A stretch of DNA of 64,000 nt from Anthoceros angustus. Lineage: Eukaryota > Plantae > Anthocerotophyta. Made by a program: the position numbers and the translations under genes. The stretch is taken from positions 186,001-250,000 of the forward strand of contig MU008194.1 in the NCBI GenBank assembly GCA_010909165.1, read 5' to 3'. Of the stretch, positions 13,285-62,699 are shown in pieces. The notes under the pieces are model-generated. The model was given only the letters and a program-made list of their open reading frames with translations, was not told where the DNA came from and searched no databases. The stretch's first letter is position 1, and the number at the start of each line of letters is the position of its first letter.

Positions 13285-14290
13285 TCACACTCCTGCTGAG
13301 CCGAACGTCATAAGCAGCCCGTAAGTGACGGCCATGGCTGCCCATCCACCCACAACCACCCGGGCTGCAGCTTTTAGCACGGGCGCTCGCCCGACTATGG
13401 CACCCGCCGATCCAAACACTGCCAGAGCAATCGTGGAAACCACCACCACCACCACCAGCCTCGCCGTGTGGTGCGGGATGAAGGCTGCTGACAGAAGCGG
13501 CACCATCGCTCCCACCGAAAACGACAATGCTGAAGCCAGTGCAGCCTGCACGGGAGTTCACATTCCCACAAAACAGTAAGACGTGTGAGCGCTATTCATG
13601 CTGATCACCAACATATCTGGCACCGTGCCATCTAGCGACATCAGATTGCGAGCACCGAAGGTAGTTGAGTGGCAGGCGCCTGGCTTCACAGAGCGGAGGT
13701 CGGGTGTTCTAGACTAGCGTCCTTCCAAATGGAAAAGAAACATTCTTGTGGAGAGATGTTACCTGCACGGGATTGGCAAGCTCGTCCACATTGATGCCGA
13801 GCCGCTCCTGGACGTGAACCTTGACCACATCCTCGCCCTTGGAGAGCTCCTCCGCGACCTGCCTGGCCAGGGCCTGGCTGAGGCCGCGCTGAACGAACAC
13901 GTCGACGAGCTCCTCGAGCTTTCTGGCGTGGGCTTCAGGCCCGCCCCGCTTGAAATCGGACTTCTCCCGCTTCACCTGCGAGAGTTCCAGGTCCCTCTGG
14001 GAATATACAGACACGAACTCCCCTATGGCCATGGAGCAGGCGCCGGCCACGAGCCCGGCGAGTCCTGTGATGACCATGGATTTGGCATCATCCTTCACGG
14101 CCCCGACTCCCATGAGGAGAGACGCAGTGGAGACGAGGCCGTCGTTTCCTCCTAGCAGGGCTGCCCTCAGCCATGGAGCCCGCTGCGAGTAGTCCGGGCC
14201 CGTCTGCAGCTGGAGCTTGTCCGGGCTGGGAGGATCTGCAGCAGCGGGGTGGACAGCCAGAGTGTGGGCACCGACTCCGGATCCGTCCAT
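13285..14290 (-). CDS. VIT1/CCC1-family vacuolar iron transporter-like (VTL/nodulin-21-like), 2 coding exons
   Basis: YSQRAPWLRAALLGGNDGLVSTASLLMGVG...AGACSMAIGEFVSVYSQRD and AALASALSFSVGAMVPLL. GT-AG intron 13546-13762 joins them in frame. Start uncertain: ATG at 14290, frame open to about 14525. Confidence 0.9.
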
Positions 14291-16280
14291 CGGTTTGCTG
14301 CACACGTTGAAGTCCAGCGCATTCTTGACGCAGAAAAGAGAGGCCTCCAGATCCACTATGCTGATCTTCAGGTTGTGCAGCGGCTGCTCCACGCTTGACG
14401 AGTCTGTGACTTGTGCGTTCCTTGGTTTGGATGGGCTGAGGTCCTTGGACAGGGAGGGTCTGGCCTCAGGCGTGGAACCCATTCTAAGACAGTGGCCGCC
14501 GCCCACAAGCTTGTCAAATGAATAATCTGCAGAAGTTAAATAGCTGCCGGCAAGGACCCGCCGTGATTCAATGCATTCTGCCTGGGCCCCGCGGGGATCA
14601 TGAGCGGTTCCGATGCATCAGCTGGAATGCCTGCAGTGTGTGGCACAATCCTTCATTCCCAAGGACATATGTTTGATAGCAAGCGTCTGTACATGCTGAA
14701 TAAGGCTCTGCGCGTCCAAACCCACAACTGCTCAGTCCCTCAAGCTCTGCCCTCTCTCATAAAGCTACCAGACGCGATTACTAACTTCCACGACTAGTAA
14801 GTGAAGCAAAACTGGTATGTTCGATCTACACTTTTTGTTTGCAAGCATGCAAAAACGAATGCAGCCTACAGTAGTTGAAGGGGGATAATTTGAGCGAATC
14901 AAACAAGTAGTTGAAGCTTAAGGCAGCATTTCATGGTCTTTCGAACTGTGCAAGTGGAGAAATGCTTACTGAGAGTCGTCTGGAAAGAATGCCATTGGAG
15001 TTGTGACGCGAGAGAGAGAGAGAGCTCATAGATTTGGTAAGCAAGCGCAAGCTCAAGCTCGGGATCCTTCTTCCAGCTATTTAAGTACTTTTGTTGGGCA
15101 CAAGCTGAAACTCACACTGCGGGCATGAAGGCATCAAGGGCAGCGTTGGAAGGACGCGGCAGCAGATCAGCAGCACTTCCAAGAGCCCAATCCGTGGTAC
15201 ACCATAGGGCAGCCTTGACTGCAAAGACAGTCCGAGGGGGACATCACTGACTGATGGCAGACTTCCTCTTCCTCTTGGAATCCTCCTCCTCCTCCTCCTC
15301 CGCAGCAGCAGCAGCAGCAGCGAGCACAGGAGAGCTTTGGAAAAGAGGCTGCACAAACACACGGGGCCGCCTTCAAATACCTCGGCTACAGATCCGGGAG
15401 CTTGAAACGAAGCCAAGTCCGAGGGTCCGAGGGTCCGAGGGGCCTTCACAGTCTCCGATCCAGTGCTCCCCAAGGCAGCCCAGGCGGCACACACACAAGA
15501 ACACGTGGGGTTACCAGCGGCCCCGGCCGAAGTCGCAAGCAAAAGCAGGTGGGGCTGCGCCTGTGTGAATGAGCCTTGAAATAGCCCAGCCCAAGGCGAG
15601 GGCAGCAGTTGCCGGGTGCTCCCTCCGATGCGCAAAGCGCGAGCAAGTAGAAAGAGAGGCAGCGGCCCCGGCCCCGGCCCCGACCCCGGCTGCGGCTGGC
15701 AAGAAAACCACCTCCCAGACACAGCAAGGGACAAGAAGCAGCGCAGCGTCACACCATCCGCCGCACATCCCCAAAAGATGATTTCAGGCCCGGAGAAAGC
15801 GGCTCCCAGCCACTGTACAGCACGGCGGAGTCCGGTAGCAAAAAGCAGGGCAGCGCAATGCCAAGCAAGCACATCACATGAAACCGGCCGCGCCGCTCCA
15901 AATATGCCTGCCCGCTGCCCTGCGCTGCAGTACCTAATCGCCCACAATGCGCGTCATGGAGAAGAAGGGGCGGCCACGCTCACAGATTCGCGCTGCCCGG
16001 CCTCCGCCTCCGGGAATCGGAGAGTGAGACGACTCGCTTCCGATTGCAACCTCGCCCTCCCCTCGGCGGCCGAGGCCGCTGTCCCGGGACTGTGTGTTTG
16101 CACAAGTGTCTGGAGGCCCAGGCCGAGGCCCAGGGCGAGGGCAGCGAGGCTTACAGCCTTCCAGCGCGTGTCGTCCTCACGCTCGGCACGAGGCCCCCGC
16201 TTTACCCACCCCTGGTAACTCCCCGCTGCTTGCGCTGCGGCCGATAAAAAAACAAGAAACATGCAACCGCAAGAATCAAA

Positions 16281-16331: not shown

Positions 16332-17629
16332 GTGCCTTTGCCATTTTCTCACCAAACACCTCCTCCAGTAGATATCTACATCACTGCGTTACTCTTTTCT
16401 TTTCTACCTAATTATTTTACTTTCTACCCCAGAATATGCATGGATACTTCTCATAGCTACTACTACCTCCAAGGTGGGGTCTAGTGTCCTGTCCCACCAC
16501 TACTAGTACGGGGATTTGTACTAGGTTTATAACTGTATTTTAATAAAAATATATTAATGGTTTGATTGGTCATAAAGATTTTGGGCTTTGGAGGTGTTAT
16601 GGAGGATGATTTCTCACACTTCAGGCACCTTTCGTAAACTTTAGTGCTGGTGTGGGTTGTTCTTGTATGATGATGCACTTATATTTCAATGGGGTACAAC
16701 TTTGCTTTGAAAAAACCCAAAAATACAACAAAGTGGTAGGTTTGTTTTGTATTATGATCTAACTAACAATAGAGAGATAGGTTGCTTTGTATTGCGGTCT
16801 ATCTAATGACTTACACAATACAAGAAGACCTTGGAGATTGGAATGATGTGTGAACCTTATTGATCTCTGGATCATACTATTTTTTGATTTCAGTGAGTGA
16901 ATCTTTTAAACCTAATATTAAAGTACAAACAGAAAACTATTATTTTAATTTTTTAAAAAATATATAAAAATAGATAACTCAAAATATTTAATATTTCATC
17001 ATCACCAACTCGGAGGGTGAGTGAACCACATGGGTTTGACTACGAACGAATTTAAGGGAATCACTAACCAAACCTGTCGGACGAGAAGAGGAGAACATGT
17101 GAAAATTGTCAACAAAAAGGAACGGCATGTATTGAAAGTGAAGTTAAGTCAACCACACTTGCGATCAACGAACTGGCCAAGATTCTTTCAATTTTTAATA
17201 TTCCCTTGGAGTATATTTTGGAGGATGCTCCTGGAAGGAAAGTAAGTAGTTGTGTGGACATCGCCTCATGAGTTGCCCACTTCTGTTATTAATCTACACC
17301 TCAATGCGAGCCCAGGTGTTGATTCTTGTGTTGTCGTCTTTGGACTTTGGACTAATCAGGGTAGGCCTCTTCCAAGGCCGAGTTCAGCCGATGTTCCTCC
17401 ACAGTCCAGATCTTTAGGGAGTGCCAGTATGGTAGAAAAGCACAATGACTCATCAAATCTACCCATCCTGTCCGCATACACCGCTGCATAGCAGAGGCTC
17501 TTCGGAATTTGGTATGTGGTTCACCTAGAAAGCTCCGGTACTACCTAGTAGCTTGGATGGCAGAGATGTGTCCGTTCTTTGCGGACACCTTTGTCCGTGT
17601 GAAAGAGATTTCATCCCCAAGGTTTTGTA

Positions 17630-20600
17630 TTAGCTCACTTGTGATGCACATCCACGACACCTGGAGGGCAATGTGGCTCCTTGCTTGAGGCTCGTGTGTA
17701 TCCACTTCCTGAACTTGTGTCCAGCATCGATGTCACTCTTATCAAGCTGTAGAGTCTGCCTCACGTGATTCACGCCTTGGGGGTTGGACAATTCAGCAAC
17801 GCCACTGGAAACCATCTGCATGGCCGAACATGAAAAGCTCATATTTCAGGTCTAGGTTATCTGCCCTATGCACCACACTAGTACTGGTGTTATCAAGTAG
17901 CATCCTAACTCCAGGCCTAGGGCTACAGCTGCACGTCATGAGCCTGCCGGTGGTTACCAATGCAAATAGGTTGAGCAGCAATGGGGCCTCTTTGCGGACT
18001 CTGTTATAAGCTTCTATACACACGTACTCAAACAGCTTGAACCGCTTGTCGGAGATGCCGCCCATCACATATGCAAGATGCTGAGTGAACTGTTGCACAA
18101 GCCCACGGGTAATGTGTATGCTTAGGAGCACATGGGAAATACTCAGTAAGCCAGACGTATAGGAGACAAGTCAGGACCCATAAACGCCAACTGTTGCTTT
18201 CTGATTCTCTGCACAAAAGGATAAAAGATGTTGTTGGACATTCTGAGGCAACTCACCAGAAAACGACTTTGTCCTCGCTTCCTTTTCGTCCTGAACTCGG
18301 CGAGTATTTGCCTGAAATCAATGTCTGAGACGTGGCATGTTCAAGGCTCCAATTGCACTCTTACACATCCTGTACCTGTCACCTACGAGGAAGGGGACCA
18401 GACTCCGACTACCTACTGTACAGCGAACGAAGATCATCCAGAAGGGGTTTCCTGTACAGCACTACGGTCCTCAAATCCCCCAGAAGGGGAAAACGTTGTG
18501 GGATACGGAAAAATTCCCCCGTCCTTCTGACCATAACGGTATCGGCACTTCTGTTTCCAACACCAAGAATGCAGGTTGCAACACAGTACGCTGCGCACGA
18601 ATAGATCAGACTGCTAACTGCTTCTTCATATCTGTTGCCTGAAGCTCTTATAGACACACCAGGGTTTGAGCGCAGGTCAGCACAATGTCTGCAAGTTCTG
18701 ATTGCATCTTGACGTCGTATCCAGGGTACAGAGTCTAATGATACCTGTGGTGTTGTATGCCAACAGCCAATCCGACAATGCACTCGGTGTTCCTGTACCC
18801 TGGCATTTTGTGCAGCCATAGCACAACGCACAAACAGCCAGACACCCTTGGGATTAGTATCTCATCCTAACCTAACCAAACAAGCTGCGGACGGATTGCA
18901 GCCCATTTCCCTTCCCGTCTGAGGCATAAAAGTCACTCACCTCAGTGATGGACGTCAAAGATTCTGCATCCTGGACAATTTCTAGCATGCCAAAATTTGG
19001 TCCATTCGCCATGCACTTATATATTGTCATCTTCATGTCCATGCCGGCTCTTCTCCACATCTGCAATTACGTCCCAATCAATGGTTCGTTTTGGATGTTA
19101 CACAGAACTAGTTTGACAGAACCAAGGGAACGGCATGAATGACGGCAACAAACATCTAGGACAGAACCAAGGGCATGACATGCATGACGGAAACAAACAT
19201 CACCTTTTCCATCACGGAAAGCATCTGCAATCCCACCATGTCCGGGCGTAGATCTTTACCAATCTTAAAGATAACTACTACAAGACCTCCTGCTGCGTTA
19301 CTTTCCGAGTCTTTGGGGAGCTGTGATGTATGAGCATGGGGCTTGGGTCTCCTTTGATCAGCCCTTCGAAACGCCAGCCAAAGAGAAGAGCTGTCTGCTG
19401 AATCCGAGCAGTAGCAACTATCCAACACAAACCCGATCATCCTAAACCTGCATCGTGAGCAGCGGTCACGTTTAGGTCTGATGACAAGCATCATGATGAC
19501 ACAATGTTTCTCCATCTGCCCTAACCGGCCGGGTCCGATTTTCACCTCGGATCCAAAGGTAATGAAACTGGAGTGAAATCAAGAGACTTCAGTGAGCTCC
19601 TCAGCCCCTGATGCTTTTTGCTTTGCTCTAAAGTCTGCAATGAGAAGGCAATATCCGCCAGGCTTACAACCAAGGATTCCTGCTTCACCAGCTCTAATTG
19701 GAACTGAGCGTTCCAACTTTTGATAGCCTCTTTCAGTGAGACTTGATATTTCGCGTGGAAGCAAGGGTCTTGCACACGAGCCTGGAGGTGTGCAGAGTTC
19801 GTTAGCCAGCCCGTTACCAACAAGAGAATGTGCAACAAGATTATTCTGTAGTCATTCCTCGAGCTGGTCTGGGAACTCAACTTCAACATCCAAAAGAGCT
19901 GGTTGGCTATCCGCCAACTTGCACTCGCTCTTCTAAGGAGAAAGCTTAACAGCCCCGACCTTTGGAAGGGCTCGTATTGCAATGCCTGCACAGGATGGTG
20001 AGGTTAAGACTTTGCCACAGCCTGCTGGAACCGATTCTGACATCCTGCAACAGTAATTGAGAAATTGCTAAAATACCTGAACAAGCTGTAGCAAAATCAT
20101 CAGCACCTCCTCATCAGAGAGAGTGTCCAAGAGCTGCACACCATAGTCTCTAACGAAGACATCTCCAACCCGCGGATGTAAAAGCTGCTCACGTCAAATA
20201 ATCCTTGAAGGAGCGCGTCTTTCAACGACGACAGTGAAAACTGAAAACAGTACTTGAAGCAGTACCTGCAAAGCCTGAAAGGGATGCAGTCGCTCCCAAC
20301 CAGGTAATAGCCTGCATATCCTTTTGAGGAATGGTGCAATAAAATCACAATATTGGAATTTTTATAGGCGATGACAACGTCATTCTCGTACCAAACCACA
20401 ATCCACACATATTCTAGACGCATTTAAATTGACATGCCTGTGAACCTCTGCGACTTGAGAATTTTTGTCCCATTGGACTGACTGTAGAAATAGAGGTAAT
20501 ATTTCAGCTATCCTTTTTATAGCATTCCGATATCTCCATAACAAATGCATATGTTCTTGTGTAATCTTGGCATGAACTGGGTCTAGACATCCCAAAATCA

Positions 20601-21440
20601 AGATGAAAGTTCAGAATAGGATGTCTTAGAGCTCACTTATACATAGTCATATGAATTAGATTATATATACCATAATTCTCCAAGAACTTGTTTATTTTAG
20701 CCATGTCCTTTGTAGATGGAACAAATTCATCCTTACAACCTGTTATTTCAATACATACTCACTCAGATATTCTTGAGTTTATATGAGATGTTATAGAGGA
20801 TAGATCAATTCAAATAAGTCATATACTTGGATCATTGTCCTCCATATCTTGAATCACTCTTCTTCTCATTTTATTCAATGTAGAGTGATCAAACACTTGG
20901 TCAAGTTCAACATCCAAGATGCCTGAAAAGTAATCAGAGGTATTTTCCATGACAGTGCCTGCATCATGAAATTGGGTATCTATTAATAGCTCTATATATA
21001 TTTCAATGTCTGCAAAGCTGCTAGCAATTTTAAACATAAGAGTTTTACCCGGTGAAAATATTGGCTGTGTGTTCCACAATCTCATGTACTTCCTTCTATC
21101 TTCTATAGCTCCAGACTCATCTAAAAAATGAAAATTGGCCCATCCAAAAAGAGTAGCATCTACTATACCATCACCTTTCACCTGACCCGTATAAAGAGAA
21201 AAATTCAACCCCACCACCTAGGATTTTCAGGAGAAAATACTTGTTAAGCAAGAAGATTGCTCATGCGAATTTATCATATTTACATGAAATTCACTAAATA
21301 TATCTTTTCAAATGTGTACCTGAGGCATATCAAAGAGAAGAATGGGAAATGTGAGCAGTTCACGCCAACACAAGTTTTCGCAGCCCAAGATAAATGATGT
21401 TGCTTGTGAGTAATACGGCGATAAATGTTCAGCACCATGA
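17630..21440 (-). CDS. Multi-exon phosphoinositide 3-kinase-like protein, class I/II-type (C2, helical, kinase), catalytic motifs degenerate
   Basis: C2: WRELLTFPILLFDMP, FGWANFHFLD. Helical: LLWRYR...LPLFLQSVQW, QALQYEPF.RS.LLSFLLRRA...RIANQLFWMLK. Kinase: VIFKIGKDLRPDM..LQMLSVMEK, GMLEIVQDAESL, SCAAYCVATCILGVG, AYNRVRKEAPLLLNLF, SGVAELS....HVRQTLQLDKSD. The 5' end may extend to about 22945. Confidence 0.85.
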
Positions 21441-24400
21441 AATCTATAGTGGTTAAAAAAAATTCATATGCTTTTGTTTAGCAATATATGTGTAGAAGGT
21501 AGATAGCACTAACATGGATATCTGACACAAAATATTTCTCACTTCTATTAGCAACTGCATTTGTGCAATTACAATATGTAGCATTGTGTCCAAATATTGT
21601 GTAATCTCTAAGTGTGAGTTTAGCAATGATCTGAAGGATACAATGTAACAACTACATTAAAATAAAAAGGATCTTCATTGATGTTGGAAAAACATTCAGA
21701 TCTTATGCTACATCGGTTTATGGTTACATACAAGTATAGTCTGCGAAAATGTGTGGAATAACTCTGAGAAATGCAAAAGACACACAAAGGGTATTATTAC
21801 TCATCTAAGGAACTGCAAGATTTTTATCATAACTAGGAGCTCACATGGTTACCTGAGAAATTGCGTTAACCACATTTAAGCGTGCATCCTATCACCATGG
21901 ATTCACGTGAATTGTTTTAGAACATTACACCATGTTATTTACTAATCAATGCGGCAAGAAATAAAAATATAGACCCTACTTGGTAGGTTTGGAGACATGC
22001 TACTCACTTCCTTTTGATTATCTGATTCTATTTTTTTTGATTGAGCAACAACTTTGACGTTGTTTGCAACCAACCTAAGAATAATAGTTTTCTTCTCCGC
22101 AATGCATCTTTGGATATATCTGGATCAAACAATATTTGAGCTCTTTAAAGCTGCAGCTGGAATCAAGTTTATGGGACAAATGTACATTGATGATAAGCCA
22201 CAACTTGTAGCAATTTTCACAAAATTTTGATTTTGAACCTAAATCTATAATTTTGGAATAGATAGCTACCTTACTTATAATCAGACAAGGTTTTCCTAGT
22301 GCCCAACCGAGTGTCCAAATATAATGCAACTCCACCCTACAACAATAGAGGACTTCTCCTTTTACCTCCATCAAATTCTTGATATTACAAAATGACAGCA
22401 AAGGTAGGGTAAATTGTACCAGTTTAAGAGTATAATCATATGATGAATATTTATGTTTTTGGTCCAGAATATGAAATAAGTGATCTCGTATTGTGGTAAC
22501 AAGATCTGATCCTGTATTTTTCCATCATCAAAAAAATATTAATAAATGATATGTAGGGAAAAATTATAAACATAGATGTTGAATTTGACAAAAGAATGTT
22601 TGAATCAATGCATCACTATTGCAACTCATGCATGTTAGGAACCTCGGAGTGTCACTAAAATACTATTTGTTCCGGAAGATGAGAAACAACGACAGTGTAC
22701 ACCATCATGAAACTCCCCGCCAACATTTTTTTCAAGTCTACACTTACAAAAAATGGATTTGTAAGGCATTGCATGTAGCTCAAATGCCACACCATGCTGT
22801 TTATTGAATCCTAGTAAAAATAGTAGTCACCTCAAGGTCTCGTCAGAAAAGCTTTCACTTATGTCAGTATTAATGGTGTCCGTTTCAGGTTCTCTCATCG
22901 ATGATGATTCAATATAATTGAAAAGCGAACTATCTCCAGAGGAGTTCATCCTCCTCTATCCAATATATATAAAAAAACTATCAATTATCTCCAAAATACT
23001 TTGTCTTCATGAAAAATTTCCGTCTAAACGAAATGAAATTATTTTTTGAGGAAAGAAAACAAAAAATATAAAATACAAATATTCTTCATACTTTATATAT
23101 ATCTAAATTTGATAAAATTTCAAAAAAATTTCAACTTAGACTCTAAGAGAACAATAACTTACTCAAAACTTGCTAAGTATGAGAGCTATTTTGTTTAAAT
23201 TTTAGTTCAAATAGGAGCTATTTTGTTCAAATTTTAGTTCATTTTTCTTCAAATAGGAGCTATTTTTTAAATTTTAGTTCATTCTTCTTCAAGTAGTTAC
23301 ATTTGATGCTAATGGAAAATTTATATTTTGTTACTATACTTACTACCATTTTACAGGTTTTTGTATGATAAAAATTTTCTATATGAAGAACATTTTTCAA
23401 ATCAAATGATTAAAATTTTCAATGATACAAAGGAAGAATCCCTCAAGCTATTATTTTCATCCCAATGTTATGCATTTCTAGGATCCATCATCAGTCATGT
23501 ACATAGCATGTTGGTTTTTTTTTGGTTTGGTTTAGCTTATAGTAATCTAAATGGTAATTATTATATTTCAGTGAAATAATTCATTTTTTAATAGGAAGGT
23601 ATAGGTTATGATTAGGTAGGTAATACCTAGGTATTTCATATCATTATTCAATTTTATTAAATTTTAAAATTTTATTAAATTTTAAAATTTACTAGAAATT
23701 TTATTAAATTTGAAGCAAATACTATATATCCTTTTTTATACATAGGACATAGGTATCCAAGGACAGCTAGCAAGTGTGTTGCGACTTTAACCACACCAAG
23801 CCATATCTCTAACCTAGGACTTAGGGGCACCACTGCACATATAGCAAGACTGTTGTAACCCGACTATCCCTAGCCATATTGCCAACTAGGTACTACATAC
23901 TAAACACCACACAATGATGCCACTATGTCTAGATCTAGTGGCCAGTACTCTTGTTGATCATGCTTAGTGTAGCTTTTGAGCTAATCTCATACATCTTGCT
24001 CAAATTATGACGATCCTTTCTGTAACTTATAACTTGCAAAATACGTAATGCATATACCTCATGGACACAAATGTAATAAGGGGACACTAGTAGATCGTAT
24101 TGTCATTGGCGTATTGGGATTAGGGAGCTCCAAGCACAAGGTCAATTCTTTAGGAAAAGGATGCAATACTCATTTGAAATTGGGATTCTAGGGTCATAGT
24201 ACCTGGTCTTCATGCTCCCTTAGCATAGAGCTTGGCTTTCAATTCACTTAAAGGATGGATTGATTGATTTATTAATTTATTGAATATATACATATAATAT
24301 ACTAAAACATCCGATCTACAACAAACTTGTAAAATGCATTCTAGAATATCGTGGCACACGATTGTAAACCGAGATCTCAATCCTAGAATGATCAAAGAGC

Positions 24401-25639
24401 TCAAATTGAGAGTATTAGAGTGGTTCTAGAAGAATTTAATTTTTACAAAGTTTTTAAATAAATTTCTGGTTTATTTTGGTTTGCTGCTAGTTCTACACAT
24501 GATGGTTTCTTTTATATTAAAAATTTTAAAATTCTAGAAAAACCCAAAAAAGTTTAGAAGTCAGATTTTCAACCAAAGTTTTGCCACAATTATCGGCTTG
24601 AAATAGCAGCTTTGTAGCAAAACTCTAGTTAAAAATCAAGCTGTATATTGTCTTGAGAAAGGGACATGTCAAACTAGCATAGATAACTACACTCTTTCAA
24701 GATACAAGATGTCTTAGACTAGAGATTCTTATATAGTCTAGCAAACTTAGGGCTTCAGCTGGATCACTAGTAATATATTAAAATTATAAGTACCTCCACC
24801 ATAATTTAGAATAGTAGGATTTAAGAGTAAACTAGGTGGTACTATTCTTGGGGTAAGATTAATACCGAAGTAATCAGGCTTGAGGCCTATGCTAGGTACA
24901 CAAAATTATCTTGAAAACAAGCTAACTAATTGATTCTTATAGCTTTAATAGTAGTTAAGATATTTTATAATTAGTTAAGGCTTTATTTCATAGTACATTC
25001 ATAAAGGATAAATTTTAAACTAAACTGAAGGAAGATCTTGTGCTTTGGAGTCTCACACAAGGAAATTCAATACAATAAAATATAGTATAATACAATACAA
25101 TAAAAAGCCCGGGTAACTGTGGGTTAGTCCCCCCTTGTACTTTGTTATTTGTATTTTATTATATTGTATTGTAAACCAATCACCCCTCTAGGTGATATTG
25201 CATATGAATGTAAACCAATCATTGGTGAAGGCCAAGACCACTAAGAGTCACGTGTCACATTTGCTTTAACTCGTTGAAAACTTAACCACAGCAAAATTTT
25301 ATACGTCTCCTTAGAATTTTTGAAGCCCTAATTTTCAGCGAAGGTTTGCTACGAGTTTGGACTATCTATACTTGTTGCAAAACTCTATTAGAAGATAAGC
25401 CTTATATCGTCTTAAGAAAAGAACTACAAATCTTTTGTTTATGGCAATTCTAGTACTTTATAAAGATGAAAAACATTTGAGTACGATAGAGCTCATGAGA
25501 TCATAGCAAGACAAGACCATGTCGTGCAAACTATCAGAGTCTCAGGCTCAAACTTTCATGAATCTTCTTTAGTCTAGTACGCTCCGGCCAAAGAGGAGCT
25601 TGGGTCTTCCGACTCTATGTTTTGTGTTCTCTTCAACAC

Positions 25640-26120
25640 GAAATCTTGATTGACCAAATTGTATTGAGGTCTAGATGCTCTGGCTTTACAACAGCAAAGC
25701 TAATCGACCAGCAAGCCACGAAGAACCTTCATCGCATCACCACCCATGACGCTATCCGCGATGTCATGTTTGCCATAGCTTGCGAAATTGGCTACATGGC
25801 CTGGAGGGAGCGAGGGTACACTCTTTGAACATGCCGCTGACTTGTACTTTGTCCGAGGTGACCAGGTTTCGATGGCGGATATGGTGGTTATTGACCCTAC
25901 TCGAGACAGCATTTCTGCTCAAGTTATCATTAACCGTCCTGGTTGTGCTGCCGCCGGGGCTGCAGCTCTCAAGTTCGTGAAGTATAGCGGGATGCAAGCA
26001 GACCACTTCTTTATTCCGCTCACACTCGAACGTATAGGGCAATGGCTGAGGACTTCGATAGATTTCTCAAGTCCTGTGCCAGGCGACGGCAAATTGACGC
26101 TTCTTCCTCTTCCTCTGTAG
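25640..26120 (+). mobile_element. 3' fragment of an RLE-type (CRE/NeSL-like) non-LTR retrotransposon: zinc-knuckle remnant plus restriction-like endonuclease
   Basis: THDAIRDVMFAIACEIGY..W.E, then ADLYF..G....ADMVVIDPT...PG.AAA.AAA.K.VKY.....HFFIPLTLERIGQW. This matches the RH..vRD / PD / D.tv / K..KY / F.P...E..G.w pattern. Confidence 0.65.
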
Positions 26121-26746
26121 TTTGTAGGCCATTTGTTCTTCCTGCATATGATATTCTAGGAGGAGTAGATAACTTCAGGTAAGGAGCTTAGTCGCTCCTT
26201 TGCACCTTGACCCCCGGGGTCCACCTTGGTTGTCCCCTACTGGATGGGTTTTTTCCCGTCGTTCTTTTTTCTCAATAAATTATATATTCCTAACTCATGA
26301 TAAATTGTGCAATCCAATAATAAAGCCAACATAGAAGTCTTCTCTTTATAGGGTAGTTTCCTATGACCTGGCTAAAGATTATTCCATATTTGTTCAAATG
26401 GTGCCAAGAGATGCCGACGTGTTCTTTGTATATGTATTCTTCAAGTATTTAATAATGAAATATTATTACCTATTTATAACATATATGCAACAAGTCTTCA
26501 TAGTCTTCCTAGGTACATAGTGAGGAATCAATTAATGTATAAATATATAACATAAAAAATATGAACTCTTGTTTATTAGTAGATGTGGAATAACATCAAA
26601 CCCAAGTTATGCTTTGGATCTGTGCCAGGTCGTATAATAAGTTTTAGTTGCATAAAGAGTTTCACCTCATATCACTTTAGGAAATTACTTTCTATTGCAA
26701 CATGTATAAGACCTTTTAAATTCAAAATCAAAAATTTGCTCTCATT

Positions 26747-50668: not shown

Positions 50669-53600
50669 CCCACCTCGTTGAAAAGGGGGTGTTACTTGTG
50701 GTATCAGAGCTCAAGGTTGAAGCATCTTTTAGCTAGGACGCTAGCTGGAGATGGCCGATCACGAAGCCAGGCGAGGCGAGAGAATACGGCGAAGAAAGAG
50801 AAGGCTCCTATGGTGGAGACCACGGTGGATGAGCCTCGGATGGAGCCACTAATTCACAGGCAGCGAGGCGAGATACCTCAGGGCGGACCGTCACCATGCC
50901 GCAAGAGGAGCTTCAAAATCTTTTGAGAAGAATGGAAGCTCTAGAGCAACAAGTACAAGGAAAAGAAAGCTCGATGAAGCGAGAAGGATGATGAGCAGGA
51001 CGAATTGGAGCTGGCCCGAGAAAGGAGTAGAGCAAGGAGACCCAAGAAGTTGAGGCTAAGCGTTCCCCAGATAGGTATAAGGGTGAGCGAGATGTGGAGA
51101 AAATCAATTCGTGGTTTTCTCATTGGAAGGATACTTTTACATGCAGGATTCCGCAGAAGAGTATCTAGATCACATCGTTAACTTCTTAGAAGTGCGCTCT
51201 TACTTGGTGGAGAACTTATGTTCGAGTATTGAACAGGTAATAGAGTGGAAACTATTTCCACACAGAATTCAAAGATGCACGCAACTTCAATTCCACCAAC
51301 TAATGCATCTATCTTTGGCAAGAAGGATGCTAGAGAATGTGAAGCACAGAATGTTGCGGCGTATGTGAGTGAATTAGCTTGTGTTACAATGCCCGATATG
51401 CGGAGGTGGATAAGCTCCACGGGTTTTATAGTGGACTCAAAGGTGGGCTCTGGATAGAATTCGATGACAAACCTCAAACTCTGCGAGAGGCTATTTGCGG
51501 ATGCGATACGACACAAGTCGTGCCGAAGCACCGGTGTCTTTCGGAGGAAGGTATCCAAGATCTTTTCAAGGAAGATCACGAGGTAGAGGAAGAGCCACCA
51601 ACACCGGGCATATTGGAACAAATGATAATGTTGGCGAGGAGGAAGAGGAAGAGGAGCCAATAGAGGTCGTGGCCGTGGAAGCCAAAGGACGACAGGCCCT
51701 CAATTTGGTGCGTGCTTGATTGTGGAGCAAGGACACTGCGAAGATTGTCCGCATCTTGGGAATTCCCAACGTGATAGCCGCCAATCCTCAAGCTCGGGAC
51801 TTAGGATTCGTGAGCTTTTCTGAGCCCAAATGGCCGGTGGCCACATGTTGTGGTGACATGTGGTGAGTCATCTAGTGTCAAGGATGACACTATTTTGAGG
51901 AAGGTGGAGCCCTTATGTACATATGTGGAAAGATGAATGGCTTAGAAGTAGAGTTATTGTTGGACTCGCCACCCACAATTTTATAACTCCTCAAGGCGAA
52001 AGAGCTTGGGCTAGAATGGGCTAGTACTTCCGCCATATGGAATCAAGCAAGCTAAAGGAACTACTTTTCTTGGGTGAATTGCATGGAGTAAAGCTGCAAA
52101 TAGAAGCGTGGGAAGGATACATGAGTTTCACGATTGTAGACATGGATGACCATGATGTTATCTTGGGTCTAGAGTGGATGAAATCCAATGAAGTGCGTGT
52201 AGATGTGAAGTCCCGCACCATTGAGATATTGAAGAATGGAAAGCACAAGGTGGTTTGTGCTAATCTTAGTCGAAGCTTGAGATGTGCTCGATGCAGTTGA
52301 TTTCAAAAGAGAGCTCAAGCGGGACATAAGATGAAGAAGGAGCTTTATCTAGTTATGCTCCGAGGATTAGAGGATGGTCTTGAGGAAGAATCCTCGAGAG
52401 AAAGACATCCCAAGGAATTACAGTGTCTTGGATGACTTTAAGGATTTGATGCACGATGAATTGCCACCTTTACCGTCTCATAGAGTAGTAGATCATGAGA
52501 TTGAATTGAGGCCGAGTACGCCTCGTCGAGCACCATATAGATTGTCGCAGGATGAGCTACGGGAACTCAAGCGACAACTATCCAACTGGCCAAAGGGATA
52601 TATCGAGTCTCTAAGTCTCCTTTTGGTGCGGGTATTGTTTACGCAAGAAGAATGGAGGACTAAGGATGTGTTTAGATTACGAGCTCAATCAAATTATGAA
52701 GAATGCATATCCTTTGCCAAGAATGGATGATATGTTTGACAGGTTGAAGGGTGCCAAGTATTTCACCAAGCTAGATCTGATGGCGGGGTACTATCAGATC
52801 AGAATCGCAGAGGGACATGAGTACAAAACAGCTTGTAGGACCAGGTATGGGGCTTTTGAATTTCTGGTCATGCCATTTGGACTTACTAATGCACCTGCCA
52901 CATTTCAGACACTTATGAATACTATATTCATAGATCTGGTGGACAAGTGTGTTGTAATCTATCTGGATGACATTTTGATCTTTAGCCATACCTTGGAGGA
53001 ACATGTTGAACACTTAAGAGAAGTGTTACAAAAGCTAAGAGAGAATTCTTTGTTCTTGGCAATTAAGAAGTGTGACTTCGTCAAGACAGAGGTAGCTTTC
53101 TTAGGCTTTATTGTCTCTGGTGATGGCATCGAATGGATCCGATAAGGTGAGGGCCATTCAAGATTGGCAACCTCCTAGGAACATTCATGAGGTTCAGCTT
53201 TATGGGTTTGGCTTACGTGCGGAGATTTGTACAGATGTTTGCTAAGATAGCAGCCCCATAATGACCTCTTAAAGATGACGAAAGCTTGGAAGTGGGATCT
53301 TTGAATGTCAAGCGATTTGAATACTTGAAGATGAAATTGAGTACAACTCGGTTTTAGGAATGTATGATCCCAAGAAGGATGTGGAAGTGTCTGATGCCTC
53401 GGACGTGGCCATAGGTGGAGTGTTGATGCAAGACCATAAGCCGATAGCTTTTGAGTCAAGGAAATTGCATCCTTATGAGTTGAAGTATCCCACCTATGAG
53501 AAGGAAATGATGGCTCATTCATTGTCTCAAGGTATGGAGACACTATCTCTTGGATCTTTTGTGCTCTATCGATAATATCGACAACATACTTCTCTAACCT

Positions 53601-58090: not shown

Positions 58091-61000
58091 GCTTTCGAAA
58101 CATACTCGCCACCATTATCGTCCTTAGACACTTCAATCGGTGGCGGTGATTCTCTACAAGGGTGACAAATTTACGAAAACGTCGAACTTCATCCTTTTCC
58201 TCAAAGGATAAAACCCACACCTTGCGTGAGAAATCATCTATAAGTGACAAAATAGGAGGCACCGCCTAATGATGATGAGCATAGGTCCACATACATCCGT
58301 GAACCAACTCAAGAGGTTTACTTCTACTTTTACCTCGTGTTCGATGTGATGATTTTGTCTTTCCCATATAAGCAGTGCTCACACATCGAGAGATCGGAGA
58401 AGTTAAACGAGGATATAACGAGCGAGATAAAACCTTCATTCCCTTCGAGACATATGTCCTAAGCAATGCCACAAGGAAACATTTGGCTGCTCATCACCAC
58501 AGATCACATGATCTTTGTGATGTTTACAAGTGAGTACAAAGTGCCACACTTGATCCACGAGCTAACACAAGAGAACCTTTGGAGATCTTCCAAGAGTGAT
58601 CCCCAAACCAGTGATGGTAACCAGCATCATCAAGCATCTGCGCTAATCATGCTCTTTGTCAACTTGGAACATGCCTAACGTCCTTGACATGAATGAAGAT
58701 CCGTTGTCAAACTTGAGTTGCACATCACCTCGCTGCGATCGGCATGCATAGTTATTTCCAAGCCTAACGCATCCTTTCCTTGTAGCATCATCGTGCTAAA
58801 CCACTCTCTATGCGGAGTAACATGGAAAGATGCACGAGTCAATTATCCAATTGCGGAATAAATGACTATCCACGGTACATTGGTATGCGGCATTCAAGTA
58901 AGAAGAGATAAGGACATCTCCGTCCTCAACGAGTTTAACTCTTCCAACCGTGAAAGTCGCCTTCTTGTCGTCTGCTTCTTCTCTTTTCCTTGGTCCTTTT
59001 GAACTTCTACTCTCTTTTGAAGTGACCCCTTTTGTGACAATAGTGACACTCCACATTCTTATTCGACTACGAGATTTGCTACGAGAAGCTTACATCGGTT
59101 GCTTCCCCTTGGCGGTGGACCTCCCTCTCACTATGAGACCTTTGGAACCTTTGGAAGGTTCCATGTTTTCTGTTCACCTCCTCGGTTAACAGGCTACCTT
59201 CTACATTTACAATGGTAAGACCACTAGCGAGGAATTACTCAGTCTGAAAGGTGTCCCAACTCTGGTAATGTGACCAGAAACATAGCTCTCACGGAATGCA
59301 GGAGCGTGATACCTTGAGATGAGGCTGGCTGAAAATGGTATTGAAATCATTCGGATGATCGGACATCCTCGTCCCTTCCTTCATCTTCAAGTCCACCATT
59401 TGTTTCAACCAATACACGAGCCGCACTTTGCTTCTCATCTGAGTCACACACCACAGTAACTCGTGGTCTTATCTTTCACATTGAAGTACCTGTTTTGACA
59501 ATGTTAGCATGATAGTAGATCTAGCAAGCTCATCCAGTCCGCCACTCATCACGGTCATACTATACGGTTTGACGCCTAACAACTTTATGGGCTTGATGCT
59601 TTTTACGCACTAGAACATTATACACTTGTTCTTTCGAGCGGGAAGTTAGTACCATCTAACTTCTCGATATTGAACATGACGTTTTCGATGATGAAGACAT
59701 CATGACTCAAAAATCGTCTGAGATAAAACACTCGACTCGCCTTGTCGGAAAAGTCAAAAAGAAATGGTCGGTATTTTCTTGACTTTCCACAATATTTTGC
59801 GAATATTTCCGCTCACCGCCGGCGTTGGCACCCTCAATTGTCTTCCGCGCCGCGCGCGCCGCGCGCCGCGCGCCAGCGCCGCGCCGCGCGCCGCGCCAGC
59901 GCCGCGCCCGCCACGGCCACGCCCGCGCCCGCCAGCGCCGCGCCGCGCCGCGCGCCGCGCGCTGCGGCGGCGCGGCGCCGCGCCCTGCGGCTGCGCAGCG
60001 TCGGCGCCGCCAGCGCCCCTGGCGCTGCGGCGCCGCGCTGCGCCAGCGCCCGCGGCTGGCGCTGCGGCGCCGCGCCCGCCCGGCGCGCGGCGGCGCGGCG
60101 CCGCGCCGCGCCGCCGCGCGCGCCGCGCTGCGCCGCGCCGCGCCGCGCGCTGCGGCGCCGCGCGGCCCGCGGCGCGCGCCCGCGGCCCGCGCCGCGCGCC
60201 GCGCGCCAGCGGCTTCGCGGCGCCGCGCGTCCGCGGCTGGCGCGCCGCGCGCCACCGCGCTGCGGCGCCGCGCGCCGCGCGCCGCGCCGCGCGCCGCGCT
60301 GCGCCGCGCCAGCGCCGCGCCGCGCCAGCGCCCGCGGCTGGCGCGCCAGCGCCCGCGGCGCTGCGGCGCCGCGCCGCGCTGGCGCGCGCCCGCGGCTGGC
60401 GTCAAGGCCGCGGCCCGCGGCCCGCGGCGCGCGCGCGCCGCGCCGCGCGCTGCGGCGCCGCGCTGCGGCGCCGCGCGCGCCGCGCGCCCTGCGGCCAAGG
60501 CTGCGCGCCCGCGGCGCTGCGGCGCCGCGCGCCCGCGGCCCGCGGCTGGCGCGCCGCGCTGCGGCCGCGCGTCGGCGCCGCGCTGCGGCGGCGCGCGCCG
60601 CGCTGCGGCGCCGCGCCAGCGCCCGCGGCCGCGCCGCGCTGCGGCGCCCGCCCGCGGCCGCGCCGCGCTGGTCGCGGTCTTGCCTCGCTCACGGCCTCAT
60701 CCGCTCGCGGCTCTGCGCGCTCGCGGCCCTCGCCGCGATCTGGATCATGCACTCCGCAGCTGCGGCCTGCGGACTAGACTATTCCACGAATATTTTGCGA
60801 ATATTTGGAATTTTACGCTCACCGGCGTTTGGCACTCGGTCACTTCTGCGCCCGGCGACCTACCCGCGTCACGCGGCGCTGCGCCGCGCGCCGCGCCAGC
60901 GCCGCGCCAGCGCCGCGCGCCAGCGCCGCGCCGCGCCAGCGCCCGCGGCCGCGCCAGCGCCCGCGGCTGGCGCGCGCCTTGCAACACGCGCCGCGCGCCC

Positions 61001-62699
61001 TGCAACAGCTCGGCGCCGCGCGCCCGCGGCCGCGCCCGCGGCGCTGCGCCGCGCGCCCTGCGGCGCCCGGCGCCGCGCCCGCGGCCGCGCGCTGCGGCGC
61101 CGCGCTGCGCCGCGCCGCGCCGCGCGCTGCGGCGCCGCGCGGCCCGCGGCGCGCGCCCGCGGCCCGCGCCGCGCGCCGCGCGCCAGCGGCTTCGCGGCGC
61201 CGCGCGTCCGCGGCTGGCGCGCCGCGCGCCACCGCGCTGCGGCGCCGCGCGCCGCGCGCCGCGCGCCGCGCGCCGCGCTGCGCCGCGCCAGCGCCGCGCC
61301 GCGCGCCCGCGGCTGGCGCGCCAGCGCCCGCGGCGCTGCGGCGCCGCGCCGCGCTGGCGCGCGCCCGCGGCTGGCGTCAAGGCCGCGGCCCGCGGCCCGC
61401 GGCGCGCGCGCGCCGCGCCGCGCGCTGCGGCGCCGCGCTGCGGCGCCGCGCGCGCCGCGCGCCCTGCGGCCAAGGCTGCGCGCCCGCGGCGCTGCGGCGC
61501 CGCGCGCCCGCGGCCCGCGGCTGGCGCGCCGCGCTGCGGCCGCGCGTCGGCGCCGCGCTGCGGCGGCGCGCGCCGCGCTGCGGCGCCGCGCCAGCGCCCG
61601 CGGCCGCGCCGCGCTGCGGCGCCGCGCGCTGCGCGCCGCGCTGGTCGCGGTCTTGCCTCGCTCACGGCCTCATCCGCTCGCGGCTGCGCGCCCGCGGCCC
61701 TCGCCGCGATCTGGATCATGCACTCCGCAGCTGCGGCCTGCGGACTAGACTATTCCACGAATATTTTGCGAATATTTGGAATTTTACGCTCACCGGCGTT
61801 TGGCACTCGGTCACTTCTGCGCCCGGCGACCTACCCGCGTCACGCGGCGCTGCGCCGCGCGCGCCGCGCCAGCGCCGCGCCAGCGCCGCGCGCCAGCGCC
61901 GCGCCGCGCCAGCGCCCGCGGCCGCGCCAGCGCCCGCGGCTGGCGCGCGCCTTGCAACACGCGCCGCGCGCCCTGCAACAGCTCGGCGCCGCGCGCCCGC
62001 GGCCGCGCCCGCGGCGCTGCGCCGCGCTGCGGCGCCCGCGGCGCGCGCCGCGCGCCGCGCCCGCGGCCGCGCGCTGCGGCGCCGCGCTGCGCCGCGCCGC
62101 GCCGCGCGCCGCGCCAGCGCCGCGCTGCGGCCGCGCGCCCCATGGGGCGCCGCGCGCCCGCCAGCGCCCGCGGCTGGCGCTGCGCCCGCGGCTGGCGCGC
62201 CAGCGCCGCGCGCTGCGGCGCCGCGCTGCGCGCCGCGCGCTGCGGCGCCGCGCCAGCGCCGCGCTGCGCCAGCGCCAAGGTCGCGGTCTTGCCTCGCTCA
62301 CGGCCTCATCCGCTCGCGGCATCTTTGCGGCGCGTGCTCGCCGCGATCTGGATCATATGCTCCACGGTACAGCGCCGGCCATTGACCCGGCCTGCGGCCT
62401 AGAGTTCTAGCATCACAACACAACCAAAACCGGCTCGATGCGGTTGAAGGATCGTGGGGCATGATGGTGGAAAGAGGAGAGGAGAGGAGGAGGCAAGTGT
62501 AGCTCTCTCACATTGAGATGAGGCTTGGAGGGTATTTATACCTCCAATAGGGCTCCTAGGAAGCTCCACAAGAAGCCCCTAGGAAGGAGCACAAGAAGCT
62601 TCCTAGTAATTAGCTTAAGCTAAACTAATGATACTTAACTGACACCTAACTTAGACTAAGTGTATTAGTCTAAGTACATTGGGCTTTAATACCCTTACA
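58090..62699 (-). mobile_element. 5' half of a Copia element of the same LTR family as 4877-8207 (LTR, GC-repeat leader, gag, PR, IN start)
   Basis: LTR 62445-62699 is the reverse complement of 4877-5136. Degenerate PBS ACCGCATCGAGCC follows. Gag starts near 59703 (NIEKLDGTNF). WIIDS protease; LELVHG and IDDFSRKVWV, LRTDNGGEYVS integrase motifs. Confidence 0.85.
59845..62400. repeat. Almost pure G/C tandem array (about 970-bp period, about 2.7 units) in the Copia leader
   Basis: Long runs of GCGCC/CCGCG/GCGCT words. AT-containing anchors GGTCGCGGTCTTGCCTCGCTCACGGCCTCATCCGCTCGCGG at about 60670, 61642, 62279 and AATATTTTGCGAATATTT at about 59791, 60789, 61760. Confidence 0.85.

What the first reader, a model, noticed from the sequence alone, without database searches (positions are those of the whole stretch)
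17630..21440. Class I/II-type PI3K in a land-plant genome
Seen: diagnostic residues follow p110/class II rather than Vps34: SCAAYCVAT (CVAT, whereas Vps34 has CVIT), DLRPDM..LQM (DM vs Vps34 DQ), RIANQLFWMLK, and a C-terminal SGVAELS...HVRQTLQLDKSD..A...F...I..SL helix pattern. Established: flowering plants have only class III (Vps34). I recall class I/II-like sequences being noted in Selaginella, so this may not be new. Inference: an ancestral or horizontally acquired PI3K class retained in this lineage.
Basis: partly seen in the sequence, partly recalled or inferred. Interest (0 to 1): 0.7.

Follow-up and report, generated by a model that had tools for sequence, protein, structure and literature searches.

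The report
Dead class I/II-type PI3K gene in hornwort
A hornwort-like land plant carries, transcribes and splices a gene related to the animal/amoeba-type (class I/II) PI3-kinases that plants are said to lack. Its catalytic residues are gone and its front end is missing or decaying, so it is a relic or a non-enzymatic "pseudokinase", not a working PIP3-type kinase.

Summary
On the minus strand, 21442-17630, lie about 14 colinear exons for half a PI3K C2 domain, a helical (PIK) domain and a PI3/4-kinase domain. Exons match p110gamma, beta, delta and PI3KC2alpha in the PDB; no Vps34 chain reaches the best 60.

RNA contigs from the same organism and from a congener show GT-AG splicing. A third congener holds the locus colinearly. 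A plant VIT1 gene and an F-box gene flank it.

It is not an intact PI3K.
- At sites invariant in 68-71 of 71 relatives, DRHxxN reads NRSADT, DFG reads DFR, and GDDLRQD reads GKDLRPD.
- No ABD, RBD, PH, PX or start codon was found.
- The 5' third lies in AT-rich, CpG-poor DNA without RNA contigs.
- One exon junction is out of frame in the window organism's own RNA contig.

Against plain decay, about 759 homologous codons are open, and exons diverge 2.4% between congeners versus 6.5% for non-coding DNA (p = 1e-4).

The closest relatives are prasinophyte green-algal PI3Ks, which favours vertical retention, but the placement is unresolved.

Best reading: a catalytically dead, still partly constrained relic (pseudokinase). 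Close rival: a transcribed pseudogene. Another first-stage note in this scan (s1-258216) made the pseudokinase reading on this same stretch.

The parts
21320..21442 (-). candidate exon for the first strands of the PI3K-type C2 domain. It has no in-frame ATG and the ORF is closed upstream at 21464.
   Evidence: Weak but colinear profile hits: 6.2 bits, E 0.27 and 8.0 bits, E 0.07 with the green-clade profile. A GT donor follows at 21319. No RNA contig covers it.
20823..21217 (-). candidate exon for the second half of the C2 domain (FGWANFHFLDESG...RLW), with an insert of about 30 aa
   Evidence: Profile hit of 13.2 bits, E 0.002, colinear. Not seen by Pfam or the PDB search. 131 codons are open in DNA of 37% GC, with GC3 0.32. 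No RNA contig covers it.
20438..20601 (-). first helical (PIK) domain exon (LLWRYR...SVQWDK); its 5' end is not defined. A GC, not GT, donor at 20437 is needed to keep the frame.
   Evidence: Pfam PI3Ka E 6.5e-8. Profile E 8e-9. No spliced RNA contig.
20266..20320 (-). helical exon (LLPGWERLHPFQALQ)
   Evidence: Colinear weak profile hit. Lies in the stretch 20076-20460 that the congener's RNA contig covers unspliced. Phase inferred by hand.
20077..20184 (-). helical exon (VRDYGVQLLDTLSDEEVLMILLQLVQ)
   Evidence: Profile E 3e-10. Its donor is confirmed by the X20 joint 19984|20076.
19881..19985 (-). helical exon (ALQYEPF...RIANQLFWMLK)
   Evidence: Pfam PI3Ka E 1.8e-9. PDB PI3KC2alpha and p110gamma. 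X20 joints on both sides.
19782..19880 (-). 99-nt in-frame intron without a stop. It starts with TT instead of GT in the window, is spliced out in congener C and is retained in the window organism's RNA contig.
   Evidence: joint 19781|19881 with ends CT..AA; X2 record 19807-19970 unspliced. The profile treats it as an insert. The green-clade profile aligns nodes 839-861 both here and to the next exon.
19546..19781 (-). exon for the helical-to-kinase linker (…SLPLDP)
   Evidence: Profile hit. X20 joints on both sides. 3 differences in 238 nt between species A and C.
19204..19447 (-). kinase N-lobe exon. The ATP-binding Lys is kept (VIFK), but GDDLRQD reads GKDLRPD.
   Evidence: Profile E 4e-12. 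Joints seen in X2 and X20. Column counts in references: K 70/71, D 69/71 (here K), Q 71/71 (here P).
18941..19060 (-). kinase exon (MWRRAGMDMKMTIYKC...LEIVQDAESL)
   Evidence: Profile E 2e-14. Joints.
18745..18799 (-). kinase exon (ALSDWLLAYNTT); ends in phase 1
   Evidence: Frame fixed by homology to P0001 and by the X20 and X2 joints.
18507..18646 (-). catalytic-loop exon: SCAAYCVATCILGVGNRSADTVMV, where the family consensus is GIGDRHnDNIM. The RNA-observed acceptor at 18647 puts it out of frame. An AG two nt further on (exon starting at 18644), or the congener's acceptor at 18591, keeps the frame.
   Evidence: PDB p110gamma E 2.6e-9. Profile 71 bits. Column counts in references: D 71/71 (here N), H 69/71 (here S), N 71/71 (here T). 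Joints 18646|18745 (X2) and 18590|18745 (X20).
18257..18324 (-). activation-loop exon: (H)IDFRQIL, so DFG reads DFR
   Evidence: Joints 18324|18507 (X20) and 18089|18257 (X2 and X20). Column counts in references: D 71/71 kept; G 68/71 (here R).
17958..18089 (-). kinase C-lobe exon (FTQHLAYVMGGISDKRF...NLFAL). It is the most conserved between species: one synonymous change in 132 nt.
   Evidence: Profile E 2e-13.
17630..17815 (-). last exon with the stop codon. The C-terminal helices are diverged, and no PX or C2 domain follows.
   Evidence: Profile E 1e-9. Joint 17815|17958 in X2 and X20. 7 of 8 differences between species are non-synonymous.
17398..17629 (-). 3' untranslated region covered by RNA contigs
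   Evidence: X2 contig reaches 17485 and X20 contig reaches 17398. About 9% divergence plus indels of 1 and 8 nt.

Best explanation
This is a nuclear gene of a hornwort-like land plant that descends from a class I/II-type PI3K catalytic subunit. It most likely comes by vertical descent from the (PH)-C2-PIK-kinase PI3Ks still present in prasinophyte green algae.

It keeps the fold-defining parts: half a C2 domain, the helical domain and both kinase lobes, the ATP-binding Lys and the DFG Asp. It has lost the residues that carry out phosphoryl transfer. DRH reads NRS, the metal-binding Asn reads Thr, DFG reads DFR and GDDLRQD reads GKDLRPD. It also has no recognisable adaptor-, Ras- or lipid-binding N-terminal domain.

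Shown: the gene is transcribed and spliced, and most of its exons have stayed under purifying selection between congeners.

Inferred: it cannot phosphorylate lipids. If it acts at all, it acts as a non-catalytic (pseudokinase or scaffold) protein built from the helical and kinase-like domains. Its 5' third and its C-terminal tail are drifting.
For: Homology and class.

Catalytic-site losses at positions invariant in 68-71 of 71 relatives.

Spliced RNA with GT-AG joints in the same organism (X2, contigs 99-100% alike) and in a congener (X20).

Open homologous frames of 533 codons (helical plus kinase) and 226 codons (C2 plus first helical exon), with no stop.

Divergence between species A and C: exons 24/983 (2.4%) with only one 3-nt indel, against non-coding 38/584 (6.5%) with many indels that are not multiples of three. 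Fisher p = 1.3e-4. Exons 18257-18324 and 17958-18089 together show 1 synonymous change in 200 nt.

Because exon divergence between congeners is so low, the many departures from the family consensus, including the catalytic ones, must largely predate their split. Constraint therefore continued after catalytic death.

Colinear DNA in a third congener (X3).

The top six relatives by summed exon scores all belong to the green-algal clade, and the best summed likelihood placement lies inside it.
Against: The only RNA contig of the window's own organism across the 18745 junction is out of frame, with a stop after 13 codons. The congener's in-frame junction drops 18 residues of the helix before the catalytic loop.

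Several introns are retained in RNA contigs, and intron 8 has a TT donor in the window.

No start codon, no upstream exon and no RNA contig were found for the 5' third. That part lies in DNA of 35% GC with CpG o/e 0.30 and diverges 9% from congener B, close to the 10.5% of the flank.

The last exon shows 7 of 8 non-synonymous changes, and exon 18941-19060 diverges 6%.

The state of the catalytic loop in the congeners was not read directly. There is no peptide evidence.

A more distant relative's contig that is syntenic for the VIT1 gene has no PI3K exons where they would be expected.
Confidence: 0.48

Rival explanations
1. It is a transcribed unitary pseudogene. A class I/II-type PI3K gene inherited from the green-lineage ancestor is dying in this genus. 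The RNA is by-product transcription, and no functional protein is made.
For: An out-of-frame exon junction with a premature stop in the window organism's RNA contig. Retained introns. A non-GT donor at intron 8. A GC donor needed at 20437 (and hand analysis). The 5' third has no RNA contigs, start codon or upstream exons, and sits in AT-rich, CpG-poor DNA with near-neutral divergence. Catalytic residues are lost. 7 of 8 changes in the last exon are non-synonymous. There is no annotated orthologue among 1.84 billion representative proteins. PI3K exons are absent at the syntenic place in a more distant relative.
Against: Exons diverge 2.7 times more slowly than introns and UTR between congeners (p = 1.3e-4), and exon indels come only in threes. 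About 759 homologous codons have no stop, including 131 codons in 37% GC DNA, where a chance open frame has a probability of about 1e-4 (own estimate). An in-frame splice alternative exists in the window and is the one used in the congener.
Confidence: 0.36
2. It is an active class I/II PI3K that makes 3-phosphoinositides beyond PI3P in this plant.
For: The fold-defining motifs, the ATP-binding Lys and the DFG Asp are kept. The gene is expressed.
Against: The DRH Asp (71/71 in relatives), the His (69/71), the metal-binding Asn (71/71) and the DFG Gly (68/71) are all replaced, as are two invariant N-lobe residues. These residues are required for catalysis in all studied PI3Ks (established knowledge of the family).
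Confidence: 0.03
3. The gene reached the hornwort lineage by horizontal transfer from a protist or alga rather than by vertical descent. This concerns origin only, whatever the gene's present state.
For: The known distribution in Archaeplastida is patchy: only Selaginella was known in 2015 (PMC4617754). The summed likelihood placement does not reject a position on the class II stem (delta lnL 2.7) or with a long-branch group (6.6). No orthologue was seen in the syntenic contig of a more distant relative.
Against: The best-scoring relatives and the best placement are green algae, which is the plant's own wider lineage. The gene has plant-like short GT-AG introns and composition and is syntenic in three congeners. 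An amoebozoan or opisthokont donor gets no support.
Confidence: 0.12

Closest known systems
Green-algal (prasinophyte) class I-like PI3Ks. Examples: Pycnococcus provasolii XRB07167.1 (P0200), Pseudoscourfieldia marina XRB21718.1 (P0318), Crustomastix stigmatica EP00217_P008151 (cluster of P0167), and marine-metagenome relatives P0001, P0095, P0168-P0170
   Same: They have the highest summed exon similarity. C2-PIK-kinase is colinear to the last residue of the kinase domain, and most lack an RBD. The best likelihood placement is inside this clade.
   Different: The algal proteins are intronless or compact and 1000-1400 aa long. Many have an N-terminal PH domain, and all keep the catalytic residues. 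The hornwort gene is only 31-38% identical over the aligned exons of the six best-scoring clade members. It is catalytically dead and 5'-truncated or decaying.
Class I catalytic subunit reported in Selaginella moellendorffii (Philippon et al. 2015, PMC4617754)
   Same: It is the only earlier report of a class I/II-type PI3K in a land plant, and it raises the same question of retention versus transfer.
   Different: Its sequence could not be retrieved with the tools, so orthology, domain content and catalytic state were not compared.
Mammalian class I p110gamma, beta and delta
   Same: They are the best solved-structure matches for the catalytic-loop and helical exons. SCAxYCVAT and the helical motifs are shared.
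   Different: No ABD or RBD was found. The catalytic loop and DFG are mutated, and the C-terminal membrane-binding helix is diverged.
Class II PI3KC2alpha
   Same: It is the second-best PDB family and the best hit for the helical exon. The class II stem is only 2.7 lnL worse as a placement.
   Different: The ORF stops right after the kinase domain and a 3' UTR follows in the RNA contigs, so there is no PX or C-terminal C2 domain.
Class III Vps34, the one PI3K that plants are known to have
   Same: The apparent architecture C2-helical-kinase, without an RBD, is superficially the same.
   Different: No Vps34 chain is among the 60 best PDB matches of either exon tested. The gene carries CVAT, as in 274 of about 282 class I/II relatives, rather than the CVIT of Vps34 (own knowledge).
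Kinase-independent (scaffold) roles of p110beta and p110gamma, and the catalytically dead PI3K-related kinase TRRAP/Tra1
   Same: They are precedents for a PI3K-fold protein acting without catalysis (own knowledge; review PMC3215182, listed).
   Different: p110beta and p110gamma are active enzymes with extra scaffold roles. TRRAP belongs to the PIKK protein-kinase branch. I know of no naturally dead class I/II lipid-kinase paralogue, and none turned up.

Membership tests
PI3K/PI4K superfamily (Pfam PF00454 kinase plus PF00613 PIK helical domain) | recognisable helical and kinase domains in colinear order | tested here: met
   Pfam hits on five ORF pieces. 11 colinear profile hits.
Class I/II PI3K clade (as opposed to class III or PI4K) | sequence closer to class I/II than to Vps34 or PI4K; the SCAGYCVAT-type motif | tested here: met
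   The PDB top 60 are all class I/II for two exons. CVAT is shared with 274 of about 282 relatives. No outgroup tree could be made.
Class I PI3K catalytic subunit | N-terminal adaptor-binding domain and Ras-binding domain | tested here: not met
   There is no profile hit upstream of the half C2 domain in 64 kb, and the ORF is closed at 21464. Divergence beyond detection, or exons beyond the AT-rich block, cannot be excluded.
Class II PI3K | C-terminal PX and C2 domains | tested here: not met
   The stop codon at 17630-17632 lies directly after the kinase domain, and RNA contigs continue into a 3' UTR.
Class III PI3K (Vps34) | best similarity to Vps34; CVIT motif | tested here: not met
   The architecture alone (C2-helical-kinase) would fit, but the sequence does not.
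Active PI3K of any class | catalytic loop D-R-H-x-x-N and activation-loop D-F-G intact | tested here: not met
   NRSADT and DFR stand at columns that read D 71/71, H 69/71, N 71/71 and G 68/71 in relatives.
Green-algal (PH)-C2-PIK-kinase PI3K clade | groups with Crustomastix, Pycnococcus and the P0001 clade in a tree | tested here: inconclusive
   The clade itself has 100% bootstrap support. The best summed per-exon placement is inside it, but only 2.7 lnL above the class II stem. Single exons scatter.
Functional pseudokinase (selected non-catalytic protein) | purifying selection after loss of catalysis, an open reading frame in mature mRNA, and a protein product | tested here: inconclusive
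   Exon versus non-coding divergence is 2.4% versus 6.5%, p = 1.3e-4. However, there is an out-of-frame junction in X2, the last exon is relaxed, and there are no protein data.

The most novel reading that the evidence does not exclude
Hornworts keep, under selection, a catalytically dead derivative of the ancestral green-lineage class I/II PI3K. This would be a natural 'lipid pseudokinase' made of the helical and kinase-like domains that acts as a scaffold or sensor. Together with Selaginella and the prasinophyte enzymes, it would show that this PI3K class was inherited vertically into land plants and lost many times, rather than being absent from the plant lineage.
Probability: 0.35. Interest if true: 0.65.

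Novelty: new variant of a known kind. Interest (0 to 1): 0.45.

Why it matters
Textbooks and reviews state that plants, fungi and algae lack class I/II PI3Ks and PIP3-type signalling. The one published exception is Selaginella (2015).

This locus adds a second land-plant lineage. With the green-algal clade found here, it makes vertical retention with repeated loss the simpler story.

It also cautions against reading such genes as evidence for PIP3 signalling, because this copy cannot be a kinase. If it proves to be selected, it would be a rare natural example of a PI3K-fold lipid kinase turned pseudokinase, in an organism where gene knockouts are becoming possible.

Tried and rejected
1. Annotated orthologue. 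A phmmer search of the catalytic-loop ORF against 1.84 billion representatives gave no near-identical protein; the best hit was 54 bits at 42% identity. Hornwort proteomes and the congeners' contigs seem absent from the protein collections: the VIT1 neighbour also has no hit above 73%.

2. Upstream domains. Stop-to-stop ORFs from 21200 to 34000, a class I/II profile and a green-clade profile found no ABD, RBD or PH exon.

3. C2 exon by Pfam and PDB: no hit. Only the custom profiles see it, weakly.

4. Single-exon ML placement on a fixed tree. The exons scatter onto long branches, so this was rejected as uninformative. It was replaced by likelihoods summed over nine exons for all 77 branches, which remained unresolved.

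5. Two IQ-TREE runs timed out.

6. Vps34 and PI4K outgroups and the Selaginella protein could not be obtained. None of the roughly 440 fetched proteins has CVIT.

7. Cross-species reading of the catalytic loop. The single read-laying run lists only 40 of 405 differences and does not cover 18535-18563 in the pieces shown.

8. A syntenic contig of a more distant relative (L005) holds no PI3K exons.

9. Literature searches found no paper on a class I/II PI3K in hornworts or other bryophytes.

Full report
**What is there.**

The finding lies on the minus strand.

Pfam recognises the PIK helical domain (E 6.5e-8 and 1.8e-9) and the PI3/PI4-kinase domain on five separate pieces.

Against solved structures, the catalytic-loop piece matches p110gamma best (E 2.6e-9), then p110beta, p110delta, PI3KC2alpha and p110alpha. 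The helical piece matches PI3KC2alpha and p110gamma. In both searches all 60 listed chains are class I or II and none is Vps34.

A profile I built from 30 full-length class I/II relatives hits eleven colinear pieces from 21442 to 17672 and nothing else in the window. The order is half a PI3K-type C2 domain (weak: E 0.27 and 0.002), then the helical domain, then both kinase lobes to the C-terminus.

CVAT is nearly universal among the relatives, but the residue after DLRQD varies within class I/II (M 66, Q 33, L 31 and others), so 'DM versus DQ' does not discriminate.

**Is it a real plant gene?**

Public runs hold the locus. Contigs of a run from the same sample that is probably RNA (X2, 99-100% alike) and of a probable RNA run from a related species (X20, 90-99% alike) skip parts of the locus. 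The ends of the skipped parts read GT..AG on the minus strand.

- Introns seen in both runs: 17816-17957, 18090-18256 and 19061-19203.
- Introns seen in X20 only: 18325-18506, about 18800-18940, 19446-19543, 19782-19880 and 19986-20076.
- The intron that ends e_k3 at 18744 is spliced to 18646 in X2 and to 18590 in X20.

A DNA contig of a third relative (X3) is colinear from 17201 to 22916.

The neighbours are a VIT1-family gene and an F-box gene. The VIT1 gene has its best named relatives in land plants and streptophyte algae, and no hit is closer than 73%. That agrees with earlier notes of this scan that call the genome hornwort-like.

The locus is therefore resident, transcribed and spliced nuclear DNA of a land plant, shared by at least three congeners.

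**Gene model, exon by exon.**

From the joints and from homology I placed the exons at:

- 21442-21320 and 21217-20823 (C2, inferred only)
- 20601-20438, 20320-20266, 20184-20077 and 19985-19881 (helical)
- 19781-19546 (linker)
- 19447-19204, 19060-18941, 18799-18745, 18646-18507, 18324-18257, 18089-17958 and 17815-17630 (kinase and stop)

Each exon is open in its homologous frame: 533 codons from 20601 onward plus 172 in the C2 exons, with no stop. The phases fit at every junction but one.

The misfit is this. Exon 18799-18745 ends in phase 1. The acceptor seen in X2 (exon starting at 18646) puts the next exon out of frame, with a stop after 13 codons. An AG two bases further on (exon starting at 18644) would be in frame. 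The junction used in the congener (18590) is also in frame, but it drops 18 residues (SGNRYEEAVSSLIYSCA plus one) of the helix before the catalytic loop (phases worked out by hand).

Further blemishes:

- The 99-nt intron 19880-19782 begins with TT in the window. It is unspliced in the X2 contig, and it is in frame without a stop.
- The junction 20438 to 20320 needs a GC donor.
- The congener's RNA contig runs unspliced through 20076-20460.
- No RNA contig covers anything upstream of about 20460.

No start codon, ABD, RBD or PH exon was found upstream.

**Catalytic state.**

The exons were aligned separately to 71 class I/II relatives.

| Site | In 71 relatives | In the hornwort gene |
|---|---|---|
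| DRH Asp | D 71/71 | Asn |
| DRH His | H 69/71 | Ser |
| Metal-binding Asn | N 71/71 | Thr |
| DFG Gly | G 68/71 | Arg |
| First Asp of GDDLRQD | D 69/71 | Lys |
| Gln of GDDLRQD | Q 71/71 | Pro |
| ATP-binding Lys | K 70/71 | kept |
| DFG Asp | D 71/71 | kept |

From what is established for this enzyme family, such a protein cannot transfer phosphate. This is an inference and was not assayed. Another first-stage note in this scan (s1-258216) read the same thing on this stretch, and I confirm the residue changes.

**Alive or dead?**

Two lines of evidence pull in opposite directions.

For decay:

- the frame-breaking junction in the window organism's own RNA
- the retained introns and the odd donor sites
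- the missing 5' end
- a compositional break at about 20400, upstream of which the C2 and first helical exons lie in DNA of 35% GC with CpG o/e 0.30 and GC3 0.31-0.39, against GC3 0.43-0.63 downstream
- divergence from congener B of 9.0% in that upstream part, against 5.2% for the gene body and 10.5% for the flank
- a last exon in which 7 of 8 differences from congener C change the amino acid

For function, counting the differences that one search reports per contig piece:

- Exons differ between species A and C at 24 of 983 positions (2.4%), with a single 3-nt indel.
- UTR and introns differ at 38 of 584 positions (6.5%), with many indels that are not multiples of three. Fisher p = 1.3e-4.
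- Exons 18257-18324 and 17958-18089 together show one synonymous change in 200 nt.
- The long open frames are not expected in decayed DNA. For 131 codons at 37% GC, my estimate of a chance open frame is about 1e-4.

Exon divergence between the congeners is very small, yet the gene departs from the family consensus at very many positions. Nearly all of those departures, the catalytic ones included, must therefore predate the congeners' split, and constraint continued afterwards. I could not read the congeners' catalytic loop directly. The tool listed 40 of 405 differences, and the pieces shown miss 18535-18563.

My best reading is a catalytically dead relic that is still partly constrained, a pseudokinase made of the helical and kinase-like domains (0.48). 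A transcribed pseudogene is a close rival (0.36).

**Origin.**

No annotated orthologue exists among 1.84 billion representative proteins.

Ranked by summed exon scores, the six best relatives are P0167, P0169, P0170, P0168, P0095 and P0165. All belong to one clade with 100% ultrafast-bootstrap support. That clade contains Crustomastix stigmatica (in the cluster of P0167), Pycnococcus provasolii and Pseudoscourfieldia marina, which are prasinophyte green algae, plus abundant marine-metagenome sequences. Their architecture is (PH)-C2-PIK-kinase, mostly without an RBD.

Class I/II-type PI3Ks therefore exist in the green lineage well beyond the single Selaginella case reported in 2015 (PMC4617754).

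Single placements scatter onto long branches. Summing the log-likelihoods over exons for each of 77 branches puts the gene beside P0001, inside the green clade. That position is only 2.7 units better than the class II stem and 6.6 better than a long-branch group.

Vertical retention is favoured but not shown.

A contig from a more distant relative (L005) is syntenic for the VIT1 gene and an intergenic piece. It has no PI3K exons in the 3.3 kb where they would be expected. This hints at loss or rearrangement there.

**Comparison with known families.**

The gene belongs to the PI3K/PI4K superfamily and, by sequence, to the class I/II side.

- It fails the class I architecture test: no ABD or RBD was found.
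- It fails the class II test: there is no PX or C2 domain after the kinase domain.
- It fails the sequence test for Vps34, although its apparent C2-helical-kinase layout looks like class III.
- It fails the test for an active enzyme.

Literature searches found no report of such a gene in hornworts or other bryophytes.

**Limits.**

- The spliced protein was never assembled, so no whole-protein search, fold or tree was made.
- No Vps34 or PI4K outgroup and no Selaginella sequence were available.
- RNA evidence consists of assembled contigs, which show presence but not isoform proportions.
- Species names are coded.

Noticed in passing
window 19782-19880 (minus strand): A 99-nt intron that is in frame, has no stop and begins with TT instead of GT in the window. 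It is spliced out in a congener's RNA and retained in the window organism's RNA contig. The green-clade profile aligns the same nodes (839-861) both to this stretch and to the start of the next exon, as if the segment were an internal duplicate.
   Followed up: partly
window about 20400-28000: A block of AT-rich (31-37% GC), CpG-depleted (o/e 0.30-0.58) DNA without recognisable genes. It begins inside the PI3K-like gene and swallows its C2 and first helical exons. The boundary coincides with the end of RNA contig coverage and with a jump in divergence from congener B from 5% to 9%.
   Followed up: partly
proteins P0001, P0095, P0164-P0170, P0126, P0200, P0222, P0318; loci L001-L004: A well-supported clade of class I-like PI3Ks, (PH)-C2-PIK-kinase and mostly without an RBD, in prasinophyte green algae (Crustomastix, Pycnococcus, Pseudoscourfieldia) and in many marine metagenomes, including TARA. 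One cluster has 171 members. This contradicts the statement that Archaeplastida lack class I/II PI3Ks apart from Selaginella.
   Followed up: partly
L005:1-7510 (Logan SRR33208241): A contig of a more distant relative. Its VIT1 gene is 77% identical in DNA, and a short intergenic piece is conserved (window 15697-15781). No PI3K-like exon lies in the 3.3 kb upstream, where the window has the last four or five exons.
   Followed up: partly
window 13712-14617 (minus) and 29628-30683 (minus): Flanking genes: a VIT1/CCC1-family iron-transporter homologue in a single 302-codon ORF, and an F-box protein gene. A reverse-transcriptase ORF lies at 52615-53142.
   Followed up: partly
window 60001-62000: A stretch of 87% GC giving very long ORFs in all frames. 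Another first-stage note (s1-258309) describes it as an A/T-free tandem array in a Copia element. I did not examine it.
   Followed up: no
window 17630-17815 versus 17958-18324: Selective regimes differ sharply between neighbouring exons in congeners. The last exon has 8 changes, 7 of them non-synonymous. The two exons before it have 1 synonymous change in 200 nt.
   Followed up: yes
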